A stretch of DNA of 64,000 bases from Lepidodermella squamata (GCA_047495785.1 JBLDXI010000017.1:2232001-2296000), one strand, 5' to 3'. Counted from the stretch's first letter, positions 2,811-48,701 are shown. Notes: generated by a model from the sequence alone, not told the origin. Program-made: numbers and translations.

Positions 2811-4117
2811 TCAGTGGTCATGAACTCCTGATCTGTACTGAAGAAGGGCAACGTCAGTTAATAGAGCTATTCCAACGATTGGAGCTTTCGTATATTCAGC
2901 GACTGTAGGCTTTCGCCGATAGCTTTTCCTCGATCCAGATTTATTCCTAGTAAAGGCCGATCCGTGCCTTATAATTGCAACAATGGCTTTCTCTGTTTTA
3001 AATAAAACATTTAACTGCGAATTGCAATTTTTTCAAACATACCTTTGCTGAATAGTTTCATCAAATGAATCGCATTGTCATCTTCAAAGGCTGTTACGTG
3101 CTTTTCAACAAGGTAATTCCCGATTGAAGATCTGATCGTAGCCTCAAGAGTTTGACCAAGGAACGATTTGCCTACCAACCTCCTCGCTTGGCTTGACTTC
3201 ATAACAGCCACAACATCGTTTTGATTTTGATTCCGATACAGCAGAATGAAATCTGATCCAAAAGACAGACTGGCCAATTCGTTGTTCCAACGTTCAGTGA
3301 TGACAGTTTCGATAGGCATAAAGGTGAAATCAGTCCGAAGACAGTCCTTCAGCCTTATCCGACTGCATTCAATAGCCCGACTCAGAAACTCCATTTCATC
3401 GCCTTGAATTTCAGCATTCAGCATGGTTAGACGTCGTAGGTTACGGCGGCACCTCAACGGCAGCCGTTCGGACCCTGAATCGAGACATTTGCCCAACAAC
3501 CAGCCAAATGGGCGGCCGAAAAATGCGAAAATCTTGAAAATCCACAGGAATTTTGCGCAAATTGCCAGCGGTTCTGTGTAGGAGCAAACTATTTCTGGCA
3601 CGTAGTTTGTAAAAACAACAATCAAAACACCGATAGCCGCGATCGAAATCGCCTTTTCCGCCGCAAGAGGCAGGTTAGGCAGCAACAAATCGAGGCATAG
3701 CGCTTGCTCGAGAAGTAAAGCGCAACCAGTGTTGGCGATAGCTATCATGAAGGTCAGACTACAATAGATAGCCTTGTCATTGAGTATCATAGGTCGCAAT
3801 TTTTCGATGTAAGCCGCTCGTTTTCGATCGTTTTCTTTGCGAGCATCCGCAAGCATGAATGGGCTGCTGAGGCTGGTTGCGATGGAGCAAGCGTCGTAGT
3901 CGTACTGGTCCTCGTCGACCAGAGCCATTTCGTCGAGATCGTCGTAGCAACCGAGTTGATCATCGTCGAAAACTGCGATCGAATGCAGCAAGTTGAACAA
4001 AGCTGAGACGACCAAGCAGAAGAATCCTAAGCTTCCACAGATGATTGTCGTTTCAAATTCGAACGAATTAGTGGATGATACATTGTTATTATGTGGGACA
4101 AGAGCTGGGTACATCAT
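2811..4117 (-). CDS. Divergent CNNM/CorB-like (DUF21 + CBS pair) metal-transporter homolog
   Basis: IVVFTNYVPEIVCS..PLAICAKFLWIFKIFAFFGRPFGWLLGKCLD resembles the DUF21 IVIFGEIVPQAIC...P...LLD motif. Intron 2993-3042 joins LFSK to EKAIVAIIR...PIVGIALLTDV (CBS2-like GIVTLEDV). Stop at 2811. Confidence 0.7.
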
Positions 4118-5665: not shown

Positions 5666-6550
5666 TCAAATGAACGAGCTCGATGATGTTCTAGACGCTT
5701 CGCTATGCGACGACGAGGACGTATTCGGCGTAGCGGTAACTCGCGAAGATTCCACCGGGCCAACTGCGCCGCGACGCAAGCCCCTGAGAAGTGCCAGCGA
5801 TAAGACGGAAAAAAATTTGCTCCACGGTTGAGTTATTTTCAGCATCATAATCTCTTCTTTTGGCGGTGATTTCTGACTAAAAAAACCTGTAAATGAGTTC
5901 GAGAAGCCAGGTGAAGGTGACGAATTATTAGAGCCGTCTACCATTAGCAACTTTGTAAAATTCTCAGATAACAGCATAGTCTTAGTAATTGAAGCGAACT
6001 CCTGAAATAAAGCTGCTTGTAAACATCCCACAAGATCCTACAAGAAAAATTGTACAAAATTCGCGAATTAATTTTGCGAAGCTCACGATAATATGCTCGG
6101 CTGTAACGCCGAAGCTGGAATGTTTCGATCCTAATTCCATAGTATATTGGATGAAAGCTTCCTTCTTATCCAATCTGAATATACATCTTTGAATGGCGTG
6201 CATAACCCGCATCGAATGCTGCCTGTATAATTTCATTTAAATTTCGATCCACCTTATAGTTATTTTTACTTTGTTTCCCAAGAATAGACAACATCTTCTT
6301 TCGAACGAGGTAGGACTTTGCTTTTGACGAAAATTTGAAAGGCGGCTGAACTGACCTTGAACAGACTGTAAAACAGCGATAATTTATTGCAATAGCGAAA
6401 AATTACTCAAATGACTCACTTCAAAAAGGCCGTGACGCCGATATTTTCCCACCGATCAGCGATGAACTCAAAACTGGTGCGCAAAATAGCGATATCGCAT
6501 TGGGTGAAACAGTCCAAGTACCAAAATTTCTGCAGTAGATTAATGTCCAT
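5666..6550 (-). CDS. Globin 1 (subfamily A), ~46 aa G-H insertion
   Basis: MDINLLQKFWYLDCFTQCDIAILRTSF..IGVTAFLNLFKVSSAAFQIF(CD1)..WETKQH(E7)SMRV..LGSKH(F8)SSFGVT..W(H8)SKFF. Introns at 6366-6419 (B12.2), 6223-6269 (E5.2) and 6038-6086 (G7.0). Confidence 0.85.
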
Positions 6551-7969: not shown

Positions 7970-8723
7970 ATGCCGCTCTTTCATAGAACTGATAAAATGT
8001 CCAAGAAGCTCGACTTCTCGTGGTTTTTTGGAGGCTACTCTAGTCAGGAAATTTCATCGCTGAAGAACGATCTGTCTCTAATCGAAGACAAAATCGATGA
8101 CATTGGGGTTTCTGCTCTTGCCAGGTGGGACATTTTGCAAATTAGTCATTAAAATTATTTTAAAATTTGGTTAACGCAGGCTGGCAGACGAATGCCAAGA
8201 GGCTTATGCCGTATTTTCTGCGAACAACTTGCTGCCGGCGAAAAATGGCACCAGATTGCAAGATGCGCCTCAATTGCGAAGTCACGCGCATCGCATTATG
8301 CAAACATTGACGAAATTCGTTGAAAAGCTCGAAAATCGACAGGAATTTCTCGACTTCGCATCGACCCTCGCAACAATACACACCGGCTATGGCATAAAGC
8401 CTGATTTTATCATGGCAATGATGGCTAGTTTACGCCAGGCTCTTTTCGACCAATTGATCATTTCACGTGAGGGCGATGAAGGCTTGTCGATGATGCGGCG
8501 GCGTTTTTCTCGTCGGAGCTCATCGCGGTCTTCGAGCACGTGCGAAGGTTGCAGCCGACGAGACAGTGCTTCCAGTACCGCGTCTCACGACGACAGCAGC
8601 GACGATGGCGATCGGTGTTATACTGCTCCTGAGTTTGATGTCTGGAATAAACTGTTTATGACGTTGTCTTTAGCGCTGATTAACGGCATGGAGCGGTCTA
8701 AACGCAGTAAGAAGAGCCGGTGA
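7970..8723 (+). CDS. Globin 2 (subfamily B), ~50 aa Ser/Arg-rich G-H insertion containing CEGC
   Basis: LDFSWFFGGYS..IGVSALAR|LADECQEAYAVF(CD1)..LRSH(E7)AHRIM..LATIH(F8)TGYGIKP..EFDVWNKLF. Single intron 8125-8179 at B12.2. Confidence 0.85.
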
Positions 8724-9082
8724 TTTTCTTCTTTTACACAATTACGCCACGAGATCTATCGATGAAATTACCGGTGCTTGATTGACGATTTCTTGGTTTA
8801 TTTTAATAAAAAGAGACCCTGCCATGTTTTAGCTGTTTTCTTTTTCTTCCAAACGCTAATTCACTAACTAGTCAATCAAAAAAGATGCGGGCAAAAAGCT
8901 CACAGCTGCACAGCGGTGACCTAGTAATAAAATTTCAGCCGTCGAGGTGCACACTAATTACGAGCTCTTTATCGCGAGAGCAAAAAGCTCACTCGTACGC
9001 AAAAGAAACTACTTCTGCTTTCACTTGGAAACTAAATTCTGCTAATTACACGATAACTTCGAGTCCTCTGCCATCTATCACC

Positions 9083-10365
9083 ATGGATTTACCACTGGAA
9101 TGGGAAAAGGTGAGTCGGATGACAAACATTCGTTGGCTTATTGGTTGTTTATTGCCATTGCACAGCTTCTTCGGTGTTCAAACTGCGAAGTCTTGTTTTA
9201 TGCCGACAACAAAGTCAAACAGAAGATGCTACCCTGCCTTCATCGGTTCTGTGTTTTGTGCTTGCGCAAAGCCGTCGTAAATAAAGTGCTGACTTGTCCC
9301 ACCTGTTCGAAGAAATACGTTTTGACATCGTCCGGCCTGAAAGGTGAGCTCATCGAATCGAAATCGAAAATAAGTGTTCCACCTTAAATAATTAATTTAA
9401 AAGTGTTACTTTTGCACACGTTTTTAATCTCATTCGTTTTTTTCGCAGATTTCGTGACTGATTACGCGCTGTCGAGAGTTGCCGAACTTTTGTTCAAGCA
9501 TGGAGAGAGTACTTACGATCGTTTTGAAACGGTAGACGATGACTGTAAGCATTTCGCCATGGCGAGCGATGCGTTGACGGTTTGTGGGCATTGCGAACGC
9601 AAGTTCTGCCGGATTTGCATAACTCGTCACGTCGAACGCATTCGAATCGAAGCGACGTGGCTCAATCATCATGTAGGTTTAAACCGCAGTTTTCAATTAA
9701 AAATCGATGAACCCATAATCATGAAATATAGGTGGCAAATCGCTTCGAAAGTTGTCGCTCCTCGATCGAAGAAAATGGTTCGAAGCTCAAGCTGGAAATT
9801 GAGGAGCAAGCTGTGATGGCCAAGAAGTCTGTGGTCGATTGTTTCGATGCAATGATGGCTAGGCTCGTCGCTTCGAAGGAGAAGCTTATTTCGAAGATCG
9901 ACGAGGTGAGGGCGAAGCAACTATCTGCCGTTGAAAGTTTGAAAGAATCAGTCACGGTCGATTTTCGAGAAGATCTGGAGCACAAGATCAATGACCTAAA
10001 CGATATGTCAGTTCTTGAAATATCTCCCGATGTTATAGCTGGGATTTTCATCAAGTTGAGCGAAGCTGACAAGCGGTTTTCATGCATCGAAAATGTCGGG
10101 CGACTTGGCAAAGTTGGTATCAAGTTCAAGCCGAATTCATCTAGCGGCGATAGCAACTTTGTTGGCCTGGGAGAAATCGTGCTCGAAAACGGCATCAGAT
10201 TAGACAAGGTAAGCGATTGGTTTTTAAAGTCGCCTCCGAATCACCCATCACTAAAAGATTCAAGTTGTCATATTACCGAACTTTCTTTGCTTTATTTCTC
10301 ATATGTCTAAGGTATCGTGGAGTAAGAATAGGGTGACATTTTCAACGGAAACGATTAGGCTTTGA
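9083..10365 (+). CDS. TRIM/RBCC protein (RING, degenerate B-box, coiled coil); 3' end uncertain
   Basis: MDLPLEWEK|LLRCSNC..LPCLHRFCVLC..CPTC is a C3HC4 RING. CKH..CGHCERKFCRICITRH is B-box-like. ORF 9732-10208 is helical. GT-AG introns link the fragments. Confidence 0.75.
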
Positions 10366-10479
10366 GTTTAGATCAGATAGAGTTTCTAGTTTTGATTGCG
10401 TCTCAATCGTAAATAAATTTTGAAAATATTATAAATAGTATTTGAAAATAGTATAAAATACCGGTGCAACTTTGAACAT

Positions 10480-11400
10480 TTCACGCGAATCTGTTTTTGT
10501 CGGGAATCAGCGAGTGGATGGCTCTTGGGAATTTCGTAGAATATAGACATCGTTGGGGTCTAGCATTTCGCAAAGTTTTTAGTAACCCAGCCCTCATGGT
10601 CTCTCCTGAAAAGGCATTTTTAGCTTCCGATCCTGACGTGGAACGAAACTTTTTCGAAACGGTTCTTGAAGCTGGTCAACGCAATGTCGTATAAAAATCT
10701 AGTCGCTTTGCACTGAGAATCACCATACTCAGAAACTCGTTGATCAACATAGTCGACGAATCGCTTCCAATGCTGACTGTTTTTTTGCATCGTTCCAGTT
10801 GTCTCGAAACCTGACGCTATAGCTCAGCAACGTCATCGGAGTAAAGCGTCGCCTTAATTGCCGGCAGGGGATTCTTCATAAGAAAATTCGAGCTCTTGTG
10901 GTAGTTTTGACAGTTTTTGTAGTAGTTGTAGTTTTCTTCACCAACGCCCGATTATGGTTATTGCTAACATAGGTCAGGTATGCGTGAGCTAGCCACAGTT
11001 TCGAAAACATAAAAGCTTGAAGGTGAGACATTTTTCTGGCTCGCTTTCGATTGGCAGCCATCGGCCAAAATACGACCTTGAGTGCCAAAGCGAAGTGCCA
11101 AAGCAAGTTGAAATCTCGAGAAAGGCAGTTACCATCAGAAACAACGTCTTAGATATCATATGAAAAATGAATAAATTCCCTTTCCTTAGCCATATGTTAG
11201 GCTTTAGTTTGCTTATCGCCAGCATTTCTTGGTCGAGACAATCCCACTTGTTGCGAACCTTCATTAGAACTTCAAAGTTGTTGCCAATGTTTCCGAACTC
11301 ATCCGAACAAATTTAGAAAACTTATGCCACTGTAGCCTGGTCTTCTTTCCTTGCGTTCACCGACTTCTTGCCAAATGTCTCCAGCTCGGCTTTCCCCGTT
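10480..11400 (-). mobile_element. Decayed Penelope-like retroelement remnant (GIY-YIG C-terminus followed by stop-interrupted ORF sequence)
   Basis: NNFEVLMKVRNKWDCLDQEMLAISKLKPN (~11190-11285) fits the GIY-YIG end motif F.IL...E.L.I..L.P.LN. Flanking protein-like frames contain in-frame stops. Confidence 0.45.
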
Positions 11401-11848
11401 CATTTGCAGAATTTAAGAAGAAATGAGCGAATAATGGTTGAAATACAGGAAAAATACATGTTAAGCCGCGTGACTCGTTCCCTTATGTCAGAGACGTTGA
11501 GTTCTTCAAGGTACAAATGAACGATTCAGGCTATCACTGTCATCGTCCGGTGGTACAAAAATTATCGATACAATAACAATGTTATTGTACTTTCCAAAAT
11601 ACAAATAACATGCGTTTAAGGTGGATTTTTTTAATTTTCTCATGTGGTAATTTTTTTTAGATATTTCGAATTATTATTACCAACTCGACCATTTGCCCCA
11701 AATTAGCAAAATTCCTAAATTTCGTGCCTAAATTTGCCCAAAGAACACGCATGTTTCTGAACAGTAGTTTACTTTTACTAATAAATGGTTAAAACGGGTA
11801 ATAACATTTTTGAGTCCACGACCAGTACGGGAAACGGGAACAAGACAA

Positions 11849-12600
11849 TCAATTTAAGAAATCTTTGAACTGCATATGTAGCTGCTGAAATTTCAAAAAC
11901 TTCGAAAACTTGATCGCATCATCCACATCAGGAGGGCGGTACTGAGACAGAGTGAAGGAGTTCATATTTTCGTTTAGATCCGCTGCTTGTTGTTTGTTCG
12001 CGCTAGGTTCATCCGAAGGCTCCTCGACATTCGGGCGGTTCGAAGCAGGGGCGAGAAAATTTTGCATATTTTCGCGCTGCTCCTCCGGCTTCACCTTTCC
12101 ATAATTGACAAGGGCGCTCGTTGACGCATGACCGGTTATCTGGATAACTTTTTCTGGAATTACTCCATTGGCCAGTAACTCGTCCACCAGGTATTTCCGG
12201 GCGGAATGACCGGAGAGTTTTTTGTCGATTCCAGCTTTTAACGCAGCATTCTTAACCAAATCGTCGATTGTATGCTCGCCTAACTTCCCGCGTTTGTAAA
12301 ATCGCTCTTTTGATCCGATTCGCCATTTTGAATTGTACATGAGATAAAATGGATCGCTGTCTCTGCAGAAACCGACCGGTCTTTGGGCACGGAAAGCCTT
12401 GTAGATAGCAACAGGACACAAAGGATTGCCCGGGACAGCGTAAGCTCTTGGCGTGATGGCTCGATTTTTGAACCCTTTCCTGGTTTTCGTGATGCGCTCA
12501 TGAAATTGCAGGTACTCGTTTACAGGATTCGAGGTATTTTCGTTCACCAACTTCGCATCACCACAATGAGTAGGTCGATGGTTTTGAGTGGCGCAGTCTT
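11849..12600 (-). mobile_element. Crypton-type (DUF3504-like) tyrosine recombinase, 5'-truncated or frameshifted
   Basis: ERITKTRKG, CPVAIYKAF...RP....PFYL, KLGEHTI, SGHSAR, ITGHAS..ALVNY retain the catalytic K, HxxR, H and Y. The upstream LR..HR...GD motif is split across frames and there is no ATG. Confidence 0.8.
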
Positions 12601-12760
12601 GAAGAATTTGTTGTCCTTCTTACTCTCTAGAATTGTGAAGGGAATGTGTCTTTATAATTTTCAGGTTCTACTTCACTTGCAAAATTAGTGTTTGAGCAAT
12701 ATTCATTTTCTGAATTTAGCTTCGCCCCTTCTTGAAATTACCCTGCATTTTTTCATTTAG

Positions 12761-13855
12761 GAGAACGGCTTTTCGGCTGCTGGCTATTTTCACCGCCTCG
12801 CAAAGTTGGGCAGCGTTGAATCGATTAGGGAAATCTTTGACAAATTGCCAAGACAAACTGTCAAATACGCCGTCGAGCACCTGGATGAACACGATGTTAG
12901 CAAAACGATTTTGCACCAGGCCTGCGAATTCGGCCGTGTAGACCTGGTCCAGTACCTGGTCTCAAATGTCGGTGCGGACGTTCGGTCCAAGGCTTGTTTG
13001 GGTGCGCGTAGCCATCGAGACGATGCTGATTCAACGCCGATTCACCTGGCAGCTCGAAACAATCATCTCGAAATCGTTAAATTTCTGTGCGAATTCGATC
13101 CATCGCTCGCCGAGTTGAAGGAATTCAAGGATCGAACACCATTGCATTGCGCTGCTGAAAATGGCCACCTGGATTTGGTTCAGTACCTCGTCAAACATTT
13201 GAAAGTCGACGTGAACGCGAAAGACGACGATGGCGCGTCTGCTATTCGCGGGGCGGCTGAATGTGGCCACTTGGATGTTGTCAAATTTTTGGTTGAAAAT
13301 GGCTCAGATCACGATATTCTCGGGCAACACGAGGACTATTCACCTGTTTTCGCTGCGGCCAAGTCGGGTTATGAAGACGTTGTTGAGTTTCTTGTTCAAC
13401 TGGACCCTGATGTCCTTAGGCTACCGCCCGCCAAATATAAGAAGACGCTGTTAATGACCGCAGCTTTTTACGGGCAACGAAACGTGGTCGAATATTTGAT
13501 ATCACAGCGCTGCGACTTGGAAGAGCGCTTTTGGGTAGATGGCGAAACGGCGTTGATGATGGCGGCTTATCAAGGTCATTTCTCGACAGTTGTGGCCCTC
13601 GTCGAAGGTGGGGCAGATGTGGAGAAGCTTAGCACGCTGTCGAAAAGCAACCGTGAAAACAAGACTGCTCTACATTTCGCAGCTGAAAGTGGCCATCTGC
13701 CGATTGTTGAGTATTTATGCCATTTCCGTCCTGACCTGGCGACTTTGAAGAATAACAAAAAATGTACTGCTCTGGAAATGATGGTCAGTCACGGCATGAC
13801 CCAGAGGCACCCAGCCGTCTACAAATTCTTGAAAATTTTCGCTAAAGATCTTTGA
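12761..13855 (+). CDS. Ankyrin-repeat protein (~8-9 repeats); first exon not identified
   Basis: Repeated TPLH.AA..GHL.VV.YL motifs. The long exon follows the acceptor tttcatttag (12751-12760) in frame. AATAAA near 13953. Confidence 0.88.
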   Translation, partial: ENGFSAAGYFHRLAKLGSVESIREIFDKLPRQTVKYAVEHLDEHDVSKTILHQACEFGRVDLVQYLVSNVGADVRSKACLGARSHRDDADSTPIHLAARNNHLEIVKFLCEFDPSLAELKEFKDRTPLHCAAENGHLDLVQYLVKHLKVDVNAKDDDGASAIRGAAECGHLDVVKFLVENGSDHDILGQHEDYSPVFAAAKSGYEDVVEFLVQLDPDVLRLPPAKYKKTLLMTAAFYGQRNVVEYLISQRCDLEERFWVDGETALMMAAYQGHFSTVVALVEGGADVEKLSTLSKSNRENKTALHFAAESGHLPIVEYLCHFRPDLATLKNNKKCTALEMMVSHGMTQRHPAVYKFLKIFAKDL

Positions 13856-15085
13856 TTCGATGAAATAGGCTGGTCCTATTTGATCCATTTGCTTTGAAAC
13901 TTTCTTGATTGTTCATCTTCCGATTTCCTGGATAATCGCTCGATTATTGTCAAATAAAAATGGAATTTTTTTTATTTATTCAATTTCTCATATTCACTGG
14001 TGAAAATTGAAAAATAGGGCGTGGCACGAAGCAAAGAAACTGAGCGATTTTCAGGTTTCTCTCAGCTCGGGTCCACTTTTTCTTCTGGATTTTGAATTTT
14101 CAAGCTGCCGTCTGTGGTACTCCTTCGTCCTCCTTAAAAGACAAAGAAGTGCATTTGTTTAGATTTGTTTTGATGTTGCAAGGCATAGCATTTTATGGAA
14201 ATTTAGAATATCCAGCATTAACCCGATTTTTAACCCGATAAAATTGGCTGATTATTTGAAGTTGAGGAGATATTGCGCGGTGAAGCGAAGTGAAACCAGT
14301 TCGTAAAAAAAATGTCTTGTAGCGCGGAGTTTTGAAAATTTGCATTTTTCATTCGTAAAAGTTGAATCCTTGATATTGATCGATTCCTGTCCTGTGTTCA
14401 TTATCTTGAAAGTGGCATCCAAAGCATTTATCTATTTCAAGCTCACTACGTCATAATTTTTGCCCAGCCCCGCTTGTCGTTTGCTATTTTCGTCTTATAA
14501 TTGTAATTTTCTTCAATTGCTGGAAGAAGGACCTAAAAACAATGTCCGATTTTCTGCATTCAATGACAATTCAATTAGAGTGCATTTGTAAGTTATCGAA
14601 CGAGAAAATGAGCGAGGCGGTGGGGAAGCGCGGGTAAAATCCGGGTGTTTTTAATCAATTTCAATCCGCCCGCTTTAACGGAATTCGGTTAGATGGGCGG
14701 AGAAATCGCTGAAGTGGAGTTATTGTCGAACTATGCGCAAACTTCCGTACTTGATTCAACAACAGCATATAATGTATATTTGCTTTCATTATCTAGCCGG
14801 ATTGTTTTCCAATACGAGCAATCACGACTGATTGCCCACGCTGAGAGGATCTAAAAAAATGTGTACAGTACATTTGCGCGGCGTCATTGTTTTATGCTGT
14901 GAAAACTGATCGCATGAGAATTCAAGTACGCTGAATTTTTATTGCATTATGTATAACATGTCCAAAAGCAGAAGTGCGCTTCCGGAAAACAGCGCATTCA
15001 TCCTTCAGCTGATTTTCCAAGCTATAATTCAGTATATAGCATGGAGCTTATCAATTAGACCACATAGGCTGCTTTTTAATGCGGA

Positions 15086-16262
15086 ATGGCAAATGGAATA
15101 ACCAGTCACCGCTTTGACACTAGGGTTAACTTGGATTTGGCGTGGTTTTTCGGCGGTTACTCGCGCGATGAAGTTGCAGCTTTACGATCGGATCTTGACC
15201 TCATCTTACCCCATCTTGATTCGATGGGTCTATGCTGCCTTGCGAAGGTAGCCGCCGTTTGTAAAGGTGCACATGATATTTTGGCTTCGGCAAATTTGAT
15301 GCCAGATGATCAGCAGGAAGTTTTCAATTCTGACGAGGCAAAAGCTCATGGTCGCAGGATGATGATGGCATTTGTCGGAGCTATTCAAAGAATCGATCAC
15401 AAGGAGGAATTTCTCGATTATATTAGGAGCCTTTCAAGTGTTCATTGTGGTTTTGGAATAAAGCCGGACATGATAATGGTAGGTTTTCTCCAAGTTAACC
15501 TTTTCCTGGGTAGCATTTAATGTAGCTCTTGACTGGCCACGCTTACTTTATATTGCGACCTATAGTTCATGGAAGAAGGATTTTCAAATGGCACCAGATT
15601 CGAGAAAATATATTCGAAATTGAATTTAGCGGGGATTTTCAAAAAATGTGAAATAAATTGGGACAAATGCAAAAAATGGAATTTCATGCGGAAATCTGAT
15701 TTTAGAATTACTTAGAATTGAGTGCCGCACTCTCATTGCATCCGGCTTACAATCAATATAGGAAACTGAAATCAGCCAGGAAATTTGAAAATTTCGATAA
15801 TTGAGAGTCGGATCTATTTGAAAGTCGGATCTTGGAATTCCGACACGTGCCTAGTTGTAAAGTGGCTCAAAAACCAAAACCCCCAAGAGTTAAAATTTGT
15901 GATCAATTTGAGTTTAATGACCTTTAAAATCGTAATTTTTTCATCTCTGACCTCAGGCTTTCATCGCTTGCGTCCGGCAAACAGTTATCGACCACCTGTT
16001 GGTTCTGAAAGAAACTTGCGACACATCAAACGAAGAAGCTGGCAGGCTAGCTCTCAGTCGAAGGATTTCATCATCACCCGGTGAATGCGGAAGCTGTCGA
16101 AAATGCATCGGCTCGCTTGCGATATTGCGCGCCAACCCGGGCCTGTACAACGCCCGCGAATTCGACCACTGGAACAAATTTTTCATGACGCTATCGCTGG
16201 CTTTTATCAACGGCATTGAGAGGTGTACCCAGAGACGGTGTTCCCAGAGCAGGAGAAAATAA
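15086..16262 (+). CDS. Globin 3 (subfamily B), ~46 aa G-H insertion containing CGSCRKC
   Basis: LDLAWFFGGYS..MGLCCLAKVAAVCKGAHDIL..AKAH(E7)GRRM..LSSVH(F8)CGFGIKPDMIM|AFIACVRQ..EFDHWNKFF. Intron 15479-15956 at G7.0. Confidence 0.85.
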
Positions 16263-16901
16263 TCGCATGCCGGAGACGGATACAAATCAAAATGTGCAAG
16301 CCTCTACTCGCAAAATAATTCCCTTTGATACCTTATTTTTTACATTAATCGTTCAGGTAATTTCTCAATAAAAACGCGAAGAGTATTGATTCAGAGCATA
16401 TACCGGATTGAAGGGTTTTTGTTAGTTCAAGATGTCGAGGAAACGAGTTCTAGGTGCTACTGCGCGTTGAGAAAGCCCATCAAAAAAATGGCTCAACTTC
16501 CGTCTCGCCAGACTAGAATAATTTCCCCACGTTAAGTAAGAGCCGCGTGATCGATAATGACTTCACATATTCAGGGAAATCTACGCATATAAACCTGTTA
16601 GGAAAACTCGGCTGTGATAATAGCGGAATACATTTGCACAAACGCGTCTAAATCATTTATTTTTTTACTAGTAATTGGATCTCACTGGAGAATTTTACGC
16701 AGAAATAATAATACATTATTTTGTTACAAATCGATCAATTTACAACAAATGCCGCTGGTAATTTTAGAAAAAGCACATCGATGTCTGATATTACATTTGT
16801 GGGCGTGTTCTTGATGTTCATTCAGAGAGCGCGCAAAACCACGCTTTTGATAGCAGCCTTTCGCTCGTGAATCATCTTTTGTCTTATACTCACCTCGAAA
16901 T

Positions 16902-17645
16902 ATGGCGGATAGTCACACTAGGATGGATCATGACACTAGTAACCCTAGTAATCTTGACTTCGCCTGGTTTTTCGGCGGTTATTCCGACGAAGAGACGATT
17001 TCCCTCCGGTCCGATCTCGAACGGTTGAAGCCTCACATCGATGCTATGGGCGTTTGTTGCTTGGTGAAAGTAGCCCAGGGGTGCAAAGATATTCACGACA
17101 TCTTCGTTACAGCCGACATTCTACCCGCTCATCGCTACGAGGTTGCGAGATCTGAAAAAACAAAGGAACATGGCCACAAAGTTATGATGTCTTTCGTCGG
17201 CGCGTTGAATAAGATCGATAACAAAGACGCTTTCTTAGACTACATGGAGAGCTTGTCCGGGCTGCATTGCGGCCTTGGCATCAAACCTGACTACATCATG
17301 GTAAATTTTTGCTGAATTTCTTTGAAAAAATTATGTTTATCACCGCAGAATTTCATCGCTTGCGTGCGTCAAACTTTTCTCGATCACCTTCTAGTTATTA
17401 AGGAGGATGATTCATCTCATGATGCTGAAGAGAACGCGGAGGAATTGCCGCAATCTGAGACTAATAGCGATTGCTTGTGCTGCCGGCGATTTCGTGGCTC
17501 TCTAGCAGCAAAACACAGCGACCCAAGCCGGTATAATTTCCGCGAATTCGATCACTGGAACAAGTTTTTCATGACTTTCTCATTGGCTTTCATCAACGGC
17601 ATGGAGCGCCGGGCTCGCTTGAAACATGGGATTAAGAGTAAATGA
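16902..17645 (+). CDS. Globin 4 (subfamily B), ~44 aa G-H insertion containing CLCC
   Basis: LDFAWFFGGYS..MGVCCLVKVAQGCKDIHDIF(CD1)..TKEH(E7)GHKV..LSGLH(F8)CGLGIKPDYIM|NFIACVRQ..EFDHWNKFF. Intron 17301-17348 at G7.0. Confidence 0.87.
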
Positions 17646-17749
17646 TAATTTATTATTGCAAAAAAAAGAATTCTATGGCAAAATGGTCTTCAAACATATT
17701 AATAAAAATTTGCATGACAACTGCCGTAAAATCAAAAATAATAAATAAA

Positions 17750-18435
17750 TTATTTCAGCTTTCCGTTCACAGTTTTTTCGCAATCTGAAATTCGGTCAGT
17801 CGTGTCTTCAATAGGCGGCGGTGATTCGAAAAATTGCATCAGGCCAATGTTCAGCGACATGAAAAATCGATTCCAAACAAAAAATTCGTGGGATTTTTCG
17901 AAGTCAGCATAATTTCTCATATTTTTGCAATCTTGACCGGCCAATTCGCATAAAATTGCATTCCTCAGGCAGCCAATTAATACCTGGAAAAATTAAACAA
18001 TCATTGACTTTCAAATAATTCGATGTATCTTACTGTGAAATAAGTTGGATGAACACCGTAGGCAACGTGGCGTGATGAAAGTCCTTTCACGAATTCGACG
18101 TAGGCAGGTCGGTTATCAAGCCTATTAAGGCACTTTTCTATCGAGCTAAGAACCCTCAAACTGTGAGCTTTCGTTTCCCAGCTATAAAGCACATCGCTCC
18201 GATTCGTTGGCAGGACTTGTTTATTTATAAAGACAGCAAAGGCATCGGGGTGAAGGTCGAACAGGTTGGTGAAAGCAGCTATTCCTATTCGTTCCAAGAC
18301 CTCGGGCTGAGTCACTCTATTTCGAAAAGTTGTCCTTAATAGCGTTATATCTTCGTGGGAGAAGACGTCACAAAACCAGTATTGATCGTAATTTTGCGGC
18401 ATAACTTCCGTCGGTGAACCTTGCTCACTGCTCAT
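17750..18435 (-). CDS. Globin 5 (subfamily A), short ~11 aa G-H insertion
   Basis: IGIAAFTNLFDLHP(C2)DAFAVF(CD1)..WETKAH(E7)SLRV..LSSRH(F8)VAYGVHPTYFT|VLIGCLR..VWNRFF. Intron 17984-18033 at G7.0. Confidence 0.9.
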
Positions 18436-19066
18436 GATTATCGCGAATAAGAGCCTATAAAAGTGAACTCAACAAGAAAAACGCGCTAGTCAATATATAT
18501 TAGCCGGCAAAGAGGTCTCGCAGCATAATAGTACTTAAGCGGAAAAAGAGGCAAAAAAGCGATTATTGACGATTGACATGAATTAAAATTAATGCGGTAA
18601 AAAAATAACAATTGCATTATTTTACCCGAACGGAGCAGCATGTTTATACAAAAACAAAGCGGCGCCTTTTATATGGATTTATGGCCGCTATCTTCGATCA
18701 CAAACATATTTGTCAGCCATATAACCCTCCTATTTCTTGAGCGATGTTTCAATTAGCCTCTTCAGACAAAAAAAATCGACCAGTTCATGCGTTCTTTTCC
18801 CACTGTGTAAGAAAATAATCGCTTTGATGTATGCGGATTCGAAAACAGCGATTGGTACATATTCTTGATAGGACGTAGGAGAATAACACCCATATTGGAT
18901 TTACGCCGCATATGCCAGTGAATGATCGCCCTCAAGGCGGCTGTAAAAACCATATTATATGGCTATTTTATGAACGCGTAAAATTGAATTTGCACGCGCA
19001 AAGAGGCGTTTCAATGAAAAATTACCCATAAATAAATCGGCAATTTTTTTACTCGTGAAAATTAAA

Positions 19067-21573
19067 TCAGTCCAAGTAATCTCTTGTGCAGTCTTCAAAA
19101 ACCGAGTTGCCATTCAGAGTTCTAAGGTAGACGCAAGTTTGATTGAAAAGCCCATCGCTGGCATCGTTAGCGTGGGAATAGTTGTAAATAGCCGCTCCGT
19201 TGATGGCGCAGAAAAATGCGGCGCTTGTTATCAGGGCAAGAATGTCGATGAATTGGCTCAGCTTCATAGCCCGCGGTAAAATGATAGATTCTTCGTGTTT
19301 GTTGAAAGGAATCAGCCAGTTTAAGCGCCTCCACTCCGTTTTCACGACTTCTTTCGGAGTGGCCGGCCGCTCACCATTTCCATCAGAAGGTTGAGGTACG
19401 TCTTTCGAAGAGGACGGCCCTTCACTGCCAACCTGGCCATGGGAGTGAGGTTTCAGTCGAATAACATTCCGCCTCATCGGCCGCTCAATCGCACTTGTTA
19501 AAAAGCTGATTATCGAGAAATAACAAGCGCAGCCGAAGCAAAGTAGACCATGAAGTAGGACGTAGTTACTAAGGAAGATTCCTTTCGTTGTTTTTGGGAC
19601 ATTAGCCAACACTAAACCCTGTATATAGGTCAGCGAAATCAAGACTGTAACAGCGAAGGTCGGGCGATCTGGGCCATTTATCGGTAGGGCAAAGGCAATA
19701 AGTTCCACCAGAATCGATAGGACAAAGCAAGGGAGAAGGATATTATTGACATAATACCCATATTTTCGCTGGAAAGTGTACGAAAACGTGATAGTTGACC
19801 TGTCGTTGTTAACAGTGTCGCGAATTATGTTGCCAGTAGGGCTTGGCAGTAAATTTCGAATTTGCACCCGCGAGGCGATAAAGTTCCAGCTATCTGTGCT
19901 CTCCATGTTCAGCGAACTAACAGTTTGAGCCTTCCAAAACTCGATCGCGCCGAGGTAGGACAACTTTGGCCGGAAAATGAACGAGCAAGTCTGCGTATCA
20001 AACGGGAAGGTCCACATATCCATGGAGCAGTCGACCGTAAATTTACCGAAGCGGAACCAGTAGAATGACATATCGCCATCATCGTACTGCTCCTGGCCGG
20101 CTTGGGGAGGGTTAGGCTTGATTTGCATGTCATGGTCAAGCCCATCTAACATGGCGTAGTTTTCTTTAGCGTTGGCGAGTAAGATTGGCGGAATCCAAAA
20201 GTCGTTGTAATTACAGCAGCCGTCATTCTTCCCCGAGCCGAGATTTACGACTTTGAAGACCTGGCTCCTTAATAAGGAGAGAAATGTCGAGTTATCAGAC
20301 TGGCATGTAGTCTTCCATGTCGCCAAAAGTAGGCCTGACATCGTGATGCTTTCATCGACTTCATCGATTGAAGTGAACTGGGGTAGGAAGTTCAAGCCGA
20401 TGATAACAGCTGATTGAGCAAAGGACGAGCTGTCGCTGTAATTCGGAACAGGGCTCGAACGCTCAGGGGACAGATTCTCGCATTGATTGATAAAATCTTG
20501 AGCCATTATCGTACTCTCGTAAGACTCCTGAATCGTTATCCCCAGAGTTTTCGGCGGTCGAGAGTATCGCTGCTTCTCACCTAGCGTTTTTACGAAAGAA
20601 TCGTACCAGTCCGCCCCGGCCTTATTAACAAAATTGTTCCGCTTATTTCCGTTATCGTTAGTTTGATCTGAGCTGCTTTCAACCCTCAATGGCTCGGCAG
20701 ATGGGTCACTGCTTGCAGGCATTTTGGCGGCTACGTCAGCCGCGGTTGTTGTCAAAAGTCGGCTCGGTATCGTTGTCCCAACTGGCACTGTTGGGCTGGG
20801 CGCGGCTGTTGAATCAACGAAAACCCCTGGATCTGTGACTGGAGCATACGAGTAATACGGGTAATTCGTAGTTGGCATGTTCCAATCTGTCGCCGTTACA
20901 GCCCAGTTACTGAAGGTCGTAGTGAAGCTGTTAGGGTTGTAGGTTGGTCTGAAGGTAGTGAATCGATCTCTTCCGTCATTATAGTCGGGACCACGGGTAT
21001 TTCGAGGGTCTAGGCACTAGGAATAAAAGTTGACTATAAGTTGAACTCATATAGTTACCTGCGGTCCAGAAGCCACCAGGTGTTATCCACGGCCAATACG
21101 TGCTTGGGACATTCGGCCGATAAGTCATTGTGTTAGGGTTGTTGTTCGGCCTGTTTGTCGTGCCATAGGCATTTCCTCTCGATCCTCCGTCGTTATAATC
21201 AGGGCCCCGGTTGTTCCTATTAGATTCTGAAAATACGAAAATAGAGCTGAAGCTCGGGAAATCTAGATAAGGAATTACCCGTTGTCCTAGCGCTAGTAGG
21301 TTGAACCCACAGCGTCCATGGTTGTACGTTATTATTATTTCCAGTGTTTCCCCTATTATCCGTTGATGACCATGGTTGTACGTTATTATTGTTTCCCGTG
21401 TTTCCCCTATTATCCGTTGATGACCATGGTTGGACATTGTTATTGTTTCCAGTGTTGCCCCTGTTGTCTGTTGATGGATTGATATTACCAGTATTACCAG
21501 TAGTCCTGCCAGATTGTGCATCACAGTCGCCAATCGAAGCAAGCAAAAGTACGAAAATGCTCAAAATCATCAT
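19067..21573 (-). CDS. Cys-loop ligand-gated ion channel subunit (~801 aa) with a long low-complexity N-terminal extension
   Basis: Cys-loop CSMDMWTFPFDTQTC, FWIPP, pre-M1 R..GYYVNNILLPC, four TM segments. Signal peptide MMILSIFVLLLASIGDC. Introns 21227-21278 and 21010-21058 join the exons in frame (2406 nt CDS). Confidence 0.85.
21316..21477 (-). repeat. Three 54-nt coding tandem repeats (STDNRGNTGNNNNVQPWS)
   Basis: Directly visible. Units differ mainly at synonymous positions. Confidence 0.9.
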
Positions 21574-42639: not shown

Positions 42640-45600
42640 ATGCCGTTGTTGACCGACTCGCTGTTGCTATGCGAAACAGCGCCGGTTGTTGTGGACGCTA
42701 TTTTTGTCGACTGCTCTGTTTCTGTTTTCGACTGCTATCATCGCCAGCTGATAAAAAATTGGTTGAATAAGCATTTCGTGGCAGGTCATTCCACATGTTT
42801 GGCGTCGTTCGAGGCCGAACTCGGCGCTTTGATCGCAAAAGCTGTGGCGAATGCGGACGGTAATTGTGATGCGAAATGGTCGCTGCGGTTTGTCAATGGA
42901 TTTCAGCTGCTCAGCGAGTGCGACGCATCGATCCGGCGACTGCTCGAGTCGGGCACTTGCGCGCAAATGATTGTTGATTACTTCGCGGCCGCCATAAATA
43001 GATTTATTCTTGACACTAATAGCAGCACCGCCACCACCAGCTCGCCATGCGGCGGCGGCAGTGGCCTTGTCTATTTAGAGGCGAAGCTTTTGCTCAAATT
43101 GGTTCAGATATTTTCGCGCATTTTCGGCAAAATTCAGAACCATCGATCGATTTGTGTGCCCGCTCAGCTAATCGAGGCGCTGTGGACCCTGGCCGCGTCG
43201 GATTTATACGAATTGGATGTAAGAATAAATGATCATGATAATCCACTATTATGGTGGCGGTGAATACGAACTAGAAAAAAAATTGATGTTTTTTCATCCA
43301 GGTTCGCCAGGCATCGACTAATCTCATTGTGCAGTTGGCTTCCCCTAATCAGCAGTATTTTTCTTTCAAAAATCGATCTGAAGCGCTTATCGAAAAAATG
43401 GTCCCGAAAGATAGGCAAACTGCGTCTAAATTGTGCCTAAAAATTCTGGGCGCTGGGGCTTTCTGCAGTCAGCTCTTACCTGCCCAATTAGCCGCCGATG
43501 AATTGAATAATGGAGAAATTTTGTTGTTGGTTTTACTGGAAGATATCTCAAATTGTTGTTCAACAAGGTTGTAGAAAAAAATGAGAAAAAATATTTTAAT
43601 TTCGTACATTTACAGGATGTCGACGTCTTTTGCGATAGCTTTCTATCGCAGTTTATTAAGCTGGACCAAGGCTGCCGTGTAAATTTACAAAAAATCGCAG
43701 AATAAACTGTGAAAATATTGAGTTATGTGTTATAGAGCGGCATGCGCGTTGCGTTCAAATCAAATTTGGTCCACCTCAAATGTTTCGCCGGTCATGCGGC
43801 TATTCGTTCAGTTGATAGAAAGCGGCTGGGATTGTCATGCAGAGGTGAAATATCATTTCGCCATCGTGAATTTTTTAATATTTTTTTCTTAAGGTGGTGC
43901 GAGATTTGGTTTCTGAAGTCTTCGAAACACTGCTTATGTTATTCAGAAATACGATGAATTTATCTTCAAATGAGGACAATTTCCTGGGTGATCTGATTTG
44001 CACGCTACTGCGAACTGACTGGCAGTCACGGTTGAAATATCGCCCGCTATCCCAAATCACCGAGCTATTTGGCCCTGCGATTCTTTTCGAATGCGCACGA
44101 AAGGTTGATCTTGACATTCCTGAGAAAATCAGCACGGCTTTCTGTGATCGAGCTATCGCACCCCATGCTGCTACATTCATTTCCGCTATCGTAAAATCAG
44201 CTATGTGTCACTCGTCTTCGAACTTCGACGAGGACGGATTTTTGGAGGGTATGATAAGCCACGTGGTCGATGCGGCTGCGTGCGACGAGGCGGTAACACG
44301 GCATTTTGTGACATTTGCCGTGCCGAAACTGTTGAAAGTTCGTGGAAAGCGGGTTGTTGACGTCATTATCAACCGGTCCGGAAGTCGGCCTGGCCTCGAT
44401 CGGCTGCCGGACGCTGAGTATTTGATTTTGTTCTCTGTATGCCGGACAGCGCGTGCCTCTGGCCTCTATGAGCTGGGCGACGCGGGCAGCGAAAACGGAA
44501 CCGCGAAAATGGCCGTGCTATTGAGTGAAGCACTCAATCACTCAAACATACACGTATGTGCCTTGTTGCATGATCTAATTACTAGCAGTAGTAGTAGTCG
44601 TAGCGCATTCATCGTGGCTTATTTTCCGCCCCGATTCTCCGCCGACCAGAAGTCCCTAGGGCATTGTTTTTGCTATTTTGGCCGCGCAATAATTTTTCAA
44701 TTCATAGAACTTTGATTAAACTACTCGCGGCTATAAAAGCGCCATTTTTTCAGTGCAATATTGACTATTTTTTCCGGTCTCTGCCCTCACAACATCCGTA
44801 TTATTACTGCTACCCAAATGGCCTCATATTACATTACTTCCTGTATTCGTTGCAGGTGGCAGGGTTTTAAGTCAATAATTTTATTAAAAAAGTAGAACGT
44901 AAATAACGGGAATAATAAATTATTGTTTTTCTACAGATTCGGCTCGAGGCGTTTGGCTTTCTTAGCGAGAATGTCCGCATTGGCCAAGCGCTATGGGCGT
45001 GGGAGCTAGATGCAATCGAGCGATTCATCGCCGCGTCTTTCAAGGTGGATTCCAGCGATTTCCGCCAGGCTTACCGCTCGCTTTTCCGAAAATTTCTCAG
45101 CCGATTGCGAGACAGTGGCAATGTGTCCGAACGGCAACGGCCCGGGTGTGAATTAGTCAAAAATTACATCGGCTTTCTCGATCGAATGATTGGCCTCGCG
45201 CTGGAATCGCTCACATTTCCAGGCTCAGCTTTCGCCAGGCGATCGACAGCTCTCAATCTGCTGAATGTGATCGCTAGAGTTTTCCCGAAAAACGAATGCA
45301 GCTGGTTCGATTTCACGAAATGCTGCTTCGAATCGCGTCATACCACCTTAATTTTGCTGCGGGCCTTGATGCGTGATACGTACGAAGACAACAAAAAACT
45401 GGCGTATGAGTTGTTATCGCTATTCTGGCGAAATTGCGAGAGTTTAGTTGAGAGGGATGAAATTTTCGAGAAGGCTACCAGTCTTTCACAGAGCACTAAT
45501 CCTCAAAATGGGGTAACTGCGGCTTACCTGTTCAAATTACTGGCTAGTAGATTTGACGCAAATGGCGCAGGGATGGCTGAATTTATGTCTAGTACCTTGT

Positions 45601-48600: not shown

Positions 48601-48701
48601 GTGGTTTTACCTTCTATTTCGGACTTGATAAGCATCTGATTGGTTCGGATAGTTTGGTTCTGGGCGATTCGACGCATCTGGAATCTATGCTGATCTGCTG
48701 A
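42640..48701 (+). CDS. THADA: THADA/Trm732 armadillo-repeat protein (multi-exon)
   Basis: DUF2428 motifs CCWRSIKEVS, RHRGAFE, TRRSAGLP, VHALNILRAL, WSIRNS..LFSAL..RVFG. Confidence 0.9.

What the first reader, a model, noticed from the sequence alone, without database searches (positions are those of the whole stretch)
8440..17600. Conserved CxxC-basic motif inside the G-H insertion of globins 2-4
Seen: the inserts are largely unalignable and low-complexity (Ser/Arg-rich in glb2, acidic in glb4). Yet each has a CxxC about 42-44 residues after G7, followed by basic residues: TCEGCSRR (~8540), ECGSCRKC (~16085), DCLCCRRF (~17470). A conserved YxxxEFDxW precedes helix H. Inference: selective retention suggests a functional module grafted onto a globin. 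Candidates are a redox dithiol or persulfide site, a Zn or Fe-S site shared across a dimer (glb3 has CxxCxxC), or an S-acylation membrane anchor analogous to the acylated N-terminus of globin X. It is not a c-type heme motif because there is no CxxCH.
Basis: partly seen in the sequence, partly recalled or inferred. Interest (0 to 1): 0.8.

Follow-up and report, generated by a model that had tools for sequence, protein, structure and literature searches.

The report
Cysteine-basic cluster in a globin loop

Summary
glb2, glb3 and glb4 each carry a 45-52-residue insert between helices G and H. A CxxC lies 42-44 residues after G7 and is followed by Arg/Lys. RNA-like contigs show the glb3 and glb4 inserts are in spliced mRNA. 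Shuffling the inserts gives an aligned CxxC in all three about 3 times in 100,000. Synonymous sites between the paralogs are saturated, so the cysteines have been actively retained.

The motif is not a strict CxxC. The only full-length relative found in 1.84 billion proteins (P0003, in a matching gene neighbourhood, same clade) has CCNRKCSVPR. Its last Cys aligns with the first Cys of CxxC, and the second Cys is Pro. A sister lineage has KCCHR (L004) or no loop cysteine at all (L003). What is conserved is a Cys cluster plus basic residues in a loop that AlphaFold2 models as low-confidence coil.

Best reading (about 0.35): an S-acylation-type membrane-tethering site, helped by polybasic tails and possibly switched by phosphorylation of RRxS sites upstream. 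Zinc binding, a redox dithiol or no dedicated function remain open.

First-stage notes report similar CxxC-bearing GH inserts in other globin arrays of this genome; I did not verify them. I rate it a new variant of a known kind, of moderate interest.

The parts
7970..8723 (+). glb2 gene (exons 7970/7997..8124 and 8180..8723; 223-232 aa)
   Evidence: ORFs and GT..AG splice sites read from the sequence. Pfam Globin E 3.5e-7 on exon 2. No RNA evidence was obtained for this gene.
8463..8618 (+). glb2 GH insert (52 aa, Ser/Arg-rich then acidic)
   Evidence: Alignment with insert-less glb5. AF2 on the exon-2 fragment gives pLDDT <50 for fragment residues 108-147.
8541..8561 (+). glb2 Cys/basic cluster CEGCSRR, preceded by RRRFSRRSSSRSSS (RRxS sites)
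15086..16262 (+). glb3 gene (exons 15086..15478 and 15957..16262; 232 aa)
   Evidence: An RNA-like contig of run X2 skips 15478|15957 (GT..AG) and carries poly(A) near 16389. Pfam Globin.
16005..16145 (+). glb3 GH insert (47 aa)
   Evidence: It lies contiguous in the spliced X2 contig 15956-16324.
16086..16106 (+). glb3 Cys/basic cluster CGSCRKC, preceded by LSRRISSS
   Evidence: The X2 variant TGC>TGT at 16088 is synonymous within the first Cys codon.
16902..17645 (+). glb4 gene (exons 16902..17300 and 17349..17645; 231 aa)
   Evidence: X2 contig skips 17300|17349 (GT..AG, 48 nt). Pfam Globin.
17397..17531 (+). glb4 GH insert (45 aa, acidic first half)
   Evidence: Haplotype differences in 17408-17420 are D>E, a one-Ser deletion and a synonymous change in a His codon.
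17472..17498 (+). glb4 Cys/basic cluster CLCCRRFRG
   Evidence: A second haplotype in X1 and X2 changes T>A and D>N just upstream and keeps all three Cys.
17753..18435 (-). glb5, a paralog without the insert (36 residues from G7 to the Trp of helix H); used as reference for the insert boundaries
5666..6550 (-). glb1, a paralog with a GH stretch of similar length that has no cysteine in the inserted part (4 exons: 6550..6420, 6365..6270, 6222..6087, 6037..5666)
   Evidence: The model is inferred from the sequence only.

Best explanation
Shown:
- glb2, glb3 and glb4 are cytosolic-type, single-domain 3-on-3 globins with His E7 and His F8. They have no signal peptide and no N-terminal Gly2.
- They belong to a small lineage-specific clade.
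- In this clade the GH corner has been expanded by a 45-52-residue, fast-evolving loop that AlphaFold2 models as low-confidence coil.
- Inside that loop, one element is held constant: a cluster of 2-3 cysteines directly flanked by Arg/Lys. An extended form, C-x-x-[C/P]-R-x-x-[R/I]-G, is shared by glb3, glb4 and the co-ortholog P0003.

Inferred:
- The cluster is an S-acylation (palmitoylation) site.
- The adjacent basic residues and the polybasic C-terminal tails (SKRSKKSR, TQRRCSQSRRK, RRARLKHGIKSK) give the first, weak electrostatic contact with acidic membranes.
- A DHHC-type acyltransferase then fixes the loop to the membrane, tethering the globin by its GH corner.
- In glb2 and glb3, the RRxS-rich tract 7-12 residues upstream could act as a phosphorylation-controlled electrostatic switch.
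- This would be an internal-loop counterpart of the N-terminally acylated membrane globins.
For: 1. The retention is real.
- The shuffle test gives 3e-5.
- Synonymous sites are saturated while the Cys columns are conserved.
- Haplotypes vary around the cysteines but not at them.
- P0003 carries SCCNRKCSVPRIVRG at the aligned position. It groups with glb2-4 (SH-aLRT 99) and lies in a matching gene neighbourhood: glb1-like(-) / P0003(+) / glb5-like(-), with an ankyrin gene nearby.

2. The number and spacing of Cys vary (CxxC, CxxCxxC, CxCC, CCxxxC, and CC in L004), but the basic flank does not. This is expected for acylation clusters and is not expected for a fixed-geometry metal or redox motif.

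3. AF2 places the cluster in low-confidence coil.
- P0003: pTM 0.78, insert pLDDT 50-57.
- glb2 fragment: insert pLDDT <50.
- The core is a normal globin fold.

4. Local net charge around the cluster is about 0 to +4. For glb4 it is 0 over the +-12 window but +4 in the 12 residues downstream, although glb4 as a whole is -7. The last 15 residues carry +5 in all three proteins.

5. Precedents read here:
- The SNAP25/23 Cys-rich linker needs its few basic residues for membrane targeting before palmitoylation (PMC5362264).
- In the BK-channel STREX insert, a polybasic tract with a PKA serine just upstream of a palmitoylated Cys pair acts as an electrostatic switch (PMC3256903).
- Membrane-bound globins that use N-terminal acylation are known: globin X (PMC3176823) and C. 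elegans GLB-12 and GLB-26.

6. The nearest named relatives of the whole family begin MGCNQCKPC and MGSDISC. They are from Priapulus and Tigriopus, the latter annotated 'globin-like'.
Against: - No acylation predictor or experiment was available. The argument rests on pattern and analogy.
- glb2's cluster is followed by a long acidic/Ser tract. glb4's is preceded by one. Both would oppose membrane binding.
- The L003/P0028/P0029 relatives have a GH insert with no cysteine.
- glb1's GH stretch has no cysteine in the inserted part.
- Only one full-length clade member outside this genome could be found, so conservation rests on 4 sequences plus haplotypes.
- A clade-invariant Cys at helix position C1 co-occurs with the loop cluster. 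It could instead point to a disulfide or a shared metal site.
- Low pLDDT from a shallow alignment is weak evidence of disorder.
Confidence: 0.35

Rival explanations
1. Zinc (or other metal) site. The loop cysteines bind Zn in one of two ways. Either two chains each give a Cys pair, as in a zinc-hook or zinc-clasp dimer. Or the loop cysteines act together with the clade-invariant Cys at C1 or a nearby His, clamping the loop or driving dimerisation.
For: - CxxC is the classic half-site, and three window paralogs have it at the same offset.
- A second clade-invariant Cys exists at C1.
- glb3 and glb4 have His in 'DHLL' and 'EFDHW' at the base of the loop.
- First-stage notes report HxH...CxxC and CxxCxxW patterns around GH inserts in other globin arrays of this genome. 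These are unverified.
Against: - In the co-ortholog P0003 the second Cys is Pro and the spacing becomes CCxxxC.
- The His candidates are absent in glb2 and P0003.
- No four-ligand set is conserved.
- AF2 gives no ordered knuckle.
- A cysteine-free insert occurs in a related lineage.
Confidence: 0.15
2. Redox-active thiols. The cysteine pair forms a reversible disulfide, persulfide or S-nitrosothiol. This senses or relays the redox state of the heme, as the Cys pairs of neuroglobin and cytoglobin tune ligand binding.
For: - The proteins are Cys-rich (8-11 Cys in glb3 and glb4), including F9 Cys next to the proximal His in glb3 and glb4.
- Basic neighbours lower the thiol pKa.
- Redox-signalling globins are known (GLB-12, PMC4686822).
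Against: - CxxC reactivity of the thioredoxin kind depends on a folded helix N-cap context. This one sits in a coil.
- The spacing is not conserved.
- The loop is tens of residues from the heme pocket in sequence, and no fixed position is predicted for it.
Confidence: 0.15
3. No dedicated chemistry. The insert is a tolerated disordered linker. What is conserved is a short linear motif (C-x-x-x-R-x-x-R-G plus a basic patch) used for something generic, such as partner or kinase docking or nuclear or nucleic-acid targeting. Alternatively it is one ancestral GH-corner Cys with neighbours that drift in and out.
For: - Only the first Cys is invariant in the clade.
- One MAFFT alignment places it opposite a Cys of insert-less glb5.
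- GH extensions of 17-40 residues occur in several C. elegans globins without an assigned role (PMC2228317).
- The insert is indel-polymorphic.
- Inserts with no cysteine in the inserted part exist in glb1 and L003.
Against: - Extra cysteines recur next to the invariant one in all four clade members and in L004. This is unlikely at a background Cys content of 2-5%.
- The glb5 alignment is not stable between runs.
Confidence: 0.27
4. Iron-sulfur cluster ligated by CxxCxxC.
For: glb3 has CGSCRKC.
Against: - The third Cys is absent in glb2.
- The pattern differs in glb4 (CLCC) and in P0003.
- There is no fourth Cys-Pro ligand.
Confidence: 0.03

Closest known systems
C. elegans globins with long GH interhelical extensions (F49E2.4 40 aa, R102.9 32 aa and others; PMC2228317)
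   Same: Single-domain globins whose GH corner is expanded by tens of residues, within a large, divergent, lineage-specific globin family.
   Different: There is no detectable close sequence relationship. The big search returned no nematode protein among the family's true relatives. No conserved Cys/basic cluster is described for those extensions in the text read.
Membrane-bound, N-terminally acylated globins: vertebrate globin X (PMC3176823), C. elegans GLB-12 and GLB-26 (PMC4686822, PMC3520999)
   Same: Non-respiratory-type globins proposed or shown to sit on membranes through lipid modification of Cys (plus myristate). The outgroup relatives found here (Priapulus, Tigriopus) start with MGC.. 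or MGS..C.
   Different: glb2-4 start MSKK, MANG and MADS. They have no Gly2, so no N-myristoylation signal. The candidate site is internal, in the GH loop, and is paired with a polybasic C-terminus.
SNAP25/SNAP23 cysteine-rich linker and the BK-channel STREX insert (PMC5362264, PMC3256903)
   Same: A cluster of 2-4 Cys in a flexible segment between helical parts of an otherwise soluble protein or domain. It is flanked by a few basic residues needed for membrane contact. In STREX, a PKA serine lies in the basic tract upstream of the Cys pair, which resembles RRxS...C..C in glb2 and glb3.
   Different: These are unrelated proteins, so the similarity is analogy only. No zDHHC-docking motif was looked for, and acylation is untested.
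Zinc hook / zinc clasp (Rad50 CxxC; CD4-Lck) - from general knowledge, not tested here
   Same: A single CxxC per chain in an exposed position could share a metal ion between two chains.
   Different: Those motifs have invariant spacing and a structured scaffold. Here the spacing varies and the loop is predicted to be disordered.

Membership tests
Globin (PF00042, 3-on-3 fold) | Proximal His F8 and distal His/Gln E7 in register | tested here: met
   KEHG/KAHG/RSHA (E7) and LHCG/VHCG/IHTG (F8) align with haemoglobin beta in phmmer. Pfam Globin hits are above cut-off for the exon-level pieces.
Globin (PF00042, 3-on-3 fold) | Eight-helix globin fold | tested here: met
   The AF2 model of co-ortholog P0003 has pTM 0.78. 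Foldseek top matches are all globins with TM about 0.8 by target. Full-length window proteins were not folded, because no reference exists for spliced sequences.
Globin (PF00042, 3-on-3 fold) | Canonical intron positions B12.2 and G7.0 | tested here: met
   glb2 and glb1 have a phase-2 intron in helix B. glb3, glb4, glb5 and glb1 have a phase-0 intron at G7. Two of these were confirmed by RNA-like contigs.
Globin X-type acylated membrane globins | N-terminal Met-Gly (myristoylation) with nearby Cys (palmitoylation) | tested here: not met
   The N-termini are MSKKLDF (or MPLFHRT), MANGITS and MADSHTR. The feature is present only in the outgroup hits P0026 and P0027.
c-type heme attachment | CxxCH | tested here: not met
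   CEGCS, CGSCR and CLCCR: no His follows.
Thioredoxin-like redox CxxC | CxxC at the N-terminus of a helix in a thioredoxin fold, with invariant spacing | tested here: not met
   The motif lies in a coil of pLDDT 42-57. P0003 has CCxxxC with Pro at the second Cys column.
Structural zinc site (knuckle, ribbon or hook) | Four conserved Cys/His ligands, or an invariant CxxC shared between two chains | tested here: inconclusive
   No four-ligand set is conserved in glb2-4 plus P0003, and the spacing is not invariant. An intermolecular site, or one using Cys C1, cannot be excluded by sequence.
4Fe-4S ferredoxin-type motif | CxxCxxC...CP | tested here: not met
   Only glb3 has CxxCxxC.
S-acylated cysteine clusters of soluble proteins (works-like comparison, not a sequence family) | Cytosolic exposure, clustered Cys, adjacent basic or hydrophobic residues in a flexible segment | tested here: met
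   There is no signal peptide or transmembrane segment in the sequences. The loop is coil in AF2. There are 2-3 Cys, followed by 2-4 basic residues within about 12 residues downstream (2 in glb2, 3 in glb3, 4 in glb4, 4 in and after P0003's cluster).
S-acylated cysteine clusters of soluble proteins (works-like comparison, not a sequence family) | Thioester-linked fatty acid on the cysteines; membrane localisation dependent on them | not testable with these tools
   This needs acyl-exchange chemistry and localisation experiments.

The most novel reading that the evidence does not exclude
This clade of animal globins has moved its membrane anchor from the N-terminus into a purpose-grown disordered loop at the GH corner. 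The anchor is a Cys/basic S-acylation cluster under phosphorylation control. It tethers the heme domain to membranes in an orientation different from globin X, and reversibly so.
Probability: 0.3. Interest if true: 0.6.

Novelty: new variant of a known kind. Interest (0 to 1): 0.42.

Why it matters
Most animal globins outside blood and muscle have no settled function. The few that are understood better (globin X, GLB-12) work at membranes in redox signalling. Suppose this clade is tethered through an internal, switchable loop. That would show a second, independent way of putting a globin on a membrane. It would also give a handle on why this organism keeps dozens of divergent globins: localise them, mutate the cysteines, and see which process fails. 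If the cluster instead binds zinc or acts as a dithiol, it would be a new regulatory add-on to the globin fold. Either way, the experiment is cheap and well defined.

Tried and rejected
**Searches that found little**
- A word-index search with glb2 exon 2 found nothing, not even the protein itself, so this genome's proteins are not in that collection.
- Profile word searches added only P0028 and P0029, which are exon-2 ORFs of the cysteine-free L003 type. The exon-2 profile found nothing.
- The JGI metagenome scan failed on a too-diverse alignment. On the second try, none of its 393 pattern matches was confirmed as a relative by tblastn.

**False leads**
- The top hits of the 1.84-billion-protein search (P0001, P0002, P0004, P0006, P0009, P0011-13) are long multi-domain globins. 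They score by summing many weak domain hits. They have no GH insert and are not orthologs.
- P0014's striking 'MGKYCCCC' N-terminus is a gene-calling artefact. It is a wrong frame across exon 1 and the intron of the L001 glb1-like gene.
- I considered that the 'insert' might be an unrecognised intron. This is rejected for glb3 and glb4 by the spliced contigs. For glb2, the one candidate GT..AG pair I checked by eye would break the frame. No RNA evidence was obtained for glb2.

- I did not type spliced full-length proteins into any tool. glb2-4 were therefore analysed exon by exon, and P0003 stood in for the fold.
- Organism names of the runs are coded, so the species was not identified.


Full report
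**What is in the window**

The stretch holds five intron-bearing globin genes.
- glb1 lies on the minus strand, about 6550-5666.
- glb2 lies on the plus strand, 7970/7997..8124 | 8180..8723.
- glb3 lies on the plus strand, 15086..15478 | 15957..16262.
- glb4 lies on the plus strand, 16902..17300 | 17349..17645.
- glb5 lies on the minus strand, 18435..18034 | 17992..17753.

I built the models from ORFs and GT..AG sites. Pfam Globin matches the exon-level pieces weakly but above its cut-off. phmmer against PDB aligns the E7 and F8 histidines with haemoglobin beta. The introns sit at the canonical B12.2 and G7.0 positions.

Between glb2 and glb3 lie three other genes:
- a RING/coiled-coil gene;
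- a tyrosine-recombinase ORF with Phage_integrase and DUF3504 matches;
- a single-exon ankyrin gene.

**The observation**

From the G7 codon to the Trp of helix H there are 76 residues in glb2, 71 in glb3 and 69 in glb4. glb5 has only 36. The clade therefore has an extra 45-52 residues at the GH corner.

- TCEGCSRR at 8538-8561;
- ECGSCRKC at 16083-16106;
- DCLCCRRF at 17469-17492.

The first Cys falls 43, 44 and 42 residues after G7. None of the motifs is CxxCH.

The composition claims are right. glb2 is Ser/Arg-rich and then acidic. glb4 is acidic.

The Y-x-x-x-E-F-D-x-W motif is present. In the AF2 models it forms the first turns of helix H.

**Are the inserts really translated?**

I laid three public runs on 14900-18500. 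Run X2 behaves as RNA.
- One contig skips 15478|15957 (GT..AG, 478 nt). It covers 15117-15477 plus 15956-16324.
- Another skips 17300|17349 (48 nt).
- Poly(A) and poly(T) loose ends lie beside the glb3 3' end.
- No joint falls inside either insert.

The glb3 and glb4 inserts are therefore in mature mRNA. glb2 was outside the one stretch I could lay.

**Is the motif more than chance?**

I shuffled each insert while keeping its composition. All three carried a CxxC within two positions in 3e-5 of 200,000 trials. None of those trials also had a basic pair behind it.

Nei-Gojobori counts show that synonymous sites are saturated between all three paralogs (pS about 0.8). The duplications are therefore old. 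The insert evolves fast (pN 0.49-0.60, against 0.26-0.38 in the core), yet the Cys columns are kept.

Population-level variation agrees.
- All four differences between X2 and the window in glb3 exon 2 are synonymous. One of them lies inside the first Cys codon.
- A second glb4 haplotype, present in X1 and X2, has eight differences in 17460-17531. It changes T>A and D>N immediately before the cluster. The rest are synonymous, and all three Cys are kept.
- An X1 haplotype has D>E and a one-Ser deletion in the acidic part of the insert.

The flanks drift and the cysteines do not.

**Relatives elsewhere**

Searching a six-piece profile (A2) against 1.84 billion representative proteins gave only 27 hits at E<=1e-3. 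The long, high-scoring hits are unrelated multi-domain globins. The true relatives all come from metagenome or Logan contigs.

- P0003 (210 aa, intronless, E 8e-38) lies on a 38-kb contig. Its neighbourhood reads glb1-like(-), P0003(+), glb5-like(-), with an ankyrin gene nearby. This mirrors the window.
- In an IQ-TREE tree, glb2, P0003 and (glb3, glb4) form a clade with SH-aLRT 99. P0003 is 30-35% identical to the three.
- P0003's GH region is also expanded, with 66 residues from G7 to the Trp. It reads ...THSQSCCNRKCSVPRIVRG...
- MAFFT aligns its last Cys with the first Cys of the window's CxxC. It puts Pro at the second Cys column. It matches the following R-x-x-R-G to glb4's RRFRG and glb3's RKCIG.

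A second group of relatives has the same WFFGGY N-terminus and WNKFF.TLS helix H, with very different inserts.
- L004 has about 170 residues, with GKCCHRG near the start and scattered single Cys.
- L003, P0028 and P0029 have about 55 residues with no Cys.
- L002 has more than 110 acidic residues with no Cys before the contig ends.

Further word searches and a JGI metagenome scan added nothing.

A Cys/basic cluster is conserved within the clade. The CxxC spacing is not. The cluster is missing from L003.

**Structure**

AF2 on P0003, with the 13-row alignment A4, gives a confident globin (pTM 0.78). Residues 142-171 are coil at pLDDT 50-57. The cluster (Cys155, 156 and 160) sits in the middle of that coil.

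Foldseek finds only globins, with TM about 0.8 by target: Lucina HbII, cytoglobin, neuroglobin and a tardigrade globin.

The glb2 exon-2 fragment folds poorly, as a truncated globin should. Its insert, fragment residues 108-147, is below pLDDT 50.

No ordered metal-knuckle-like element appears. The alignments are shallow, so this is weak evidence.

**How it most likely works**

Four features are constant:
- two or three clustered cysteines;
- Arg/Lys right beside them;
- a flexible exposed loop;
- a polybasic C-terminal tail (+5 over the last 15 residues in all three window proteins).

The exact Cys spacing and number vary. That profile fits an S-acylation cluster with electrostatic pre-targeting better than a fixed-geometry site.

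I read two precedents.
- SNAP25/23 need the few basic residues in their Cys-rich linker for membrane contact before palmitoylation (PMC5362264).
- In the BK-channel STREX insert, a polybasic tract with a PKA serine just upstream of the palmitoylated Cys pair works as an electrostatic switch (PMC3256903).

glb2 (RRRFSRRSSSRSSSTCEGC) and glb3 (LSRRISSSPGECGSC) have that arrangement.

Membrane globins that use N-terminal acylation are established (PMC3176823, PMC4686822, PMC3520999). The family's nearest named relatives begin MGCNQCKPC (Priapulus) and MGSDISC (Tigriopus). The window proteins lack Gly2.

An anchor relocated from the N-terminus to the GH loop is thus a coherent story, but entirely an inferred one. 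I put it at about 0.35.

**Rivals**

- Zinc site shared between chains or with the clade-invariant Cys at C1, which co-occurs with the loop cluster: 0.15.
- Redox dithiol, persulfide or S-nitrosothiol site: 0.15.
- No dedicated chemistry, only a linear motif or a single ancestral Cys: 0.27.
- Fe-S cluster: 0.03.

First-stage notes say that other globin arrays of this genome show HxH...CxxC and CxxCxxW around GH inserts. I could not see those sequences. In this clade the His pair is absent.

**Comparison and novelty**

Long GH extensions are known in C. elegans globins (PMC2228317). Lipid-anchored globins are also known. A conserved Cys/basic cluster inside a GH insertion was not described in anything I read. 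The family itself has almost no representation in public protein sets. I rate it a new variant of a known kind, of moderate interest. Its value hangs on a simple acylation and localisation experiment.

Noticed in passing
window 8193-8195 (glb2), 15260-15262 (glb3), 17082-17084 (glb4); P0003 Cys48: A cysteine at helix position C1 is invariant in the four members of the CxxC clade. It is Asn, His, Pro or Ser in all other relatives aligned. It therefore co-occurs with the loop cluster and might be its partner, through a disulfide, a metal or a second acylation site.
   Followed up: partly
window 5666-6550 (-): glb1 has three introns: a B12.2-like one, a central one in helix E just before the distal His, and G7.0. 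It has a GH stretch of similar length to glb2-4 (71 residues from G7 to the Trp) with no cysteine in the inserted part, and a Ser-rich C-terminal tail. The model is from sequence only.
   Followed up: partly
window 17408-17531: Two divergent glb4 haplotypes (or a very recent copy) are present in both the DNA-like run X1 and the RNA-like run X2. There are 8 differences in 72 nt in one block. Another block has an in-frame one-Ser deletion.
   Followed up: partly
window 11849-12550 (-): An ORF with Phage_integrase (E 6e-8) and a weak DUF3504 match. This is a Crypton-like tyrosine recombinase remnant sitting between the globin genes.
   Followed up: partly
window 9100-10310 (+): A RING finger (C3HC4) ORF followed by Cys-rich and coiled-coil-looking ORFs, probably one TRIM-like gene. 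A separate B-box ORF lies at 51140-52123.
   Followed up: no
window 12806-13855 (+) and L001 11042-12100 (-): A single-exon ankyrin-repeat gene of about 350 aa lies next to the globin cluster both in the window and on the metagenome contig that carries P0003. This suggests conserved linkage.
   Followed up: no
window 19067-20878 (-), 45045-48701 (+), 3011-4117 (-): Long single ORFs match a Cys-loop receptor ligand-binding domain, THADA/Trm732 (1218 aa without an intron) and the CNNM transmembrane domain. The genome has large exons and very short introns (48-55 nt).
   Followed up: no
L001 2634-3349 (-): The database protein P0014 starts 'MGKYCCCCVSEVC', which looks like an acylation motif. It is a wrong-frame read across exon 1 and the intron of the glb1-like gene. 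The spliced model starts MAQFQEMWYLD.
   Followed up: yes
L001 4695-5446 (-): The glb5-like gene of the related organism has its own Cys-rich GH corner (GHCGLDNCNG...NCGLW). Cysteines at the GH corner therefore recur outside the CxxC clade.
   Followed up: no
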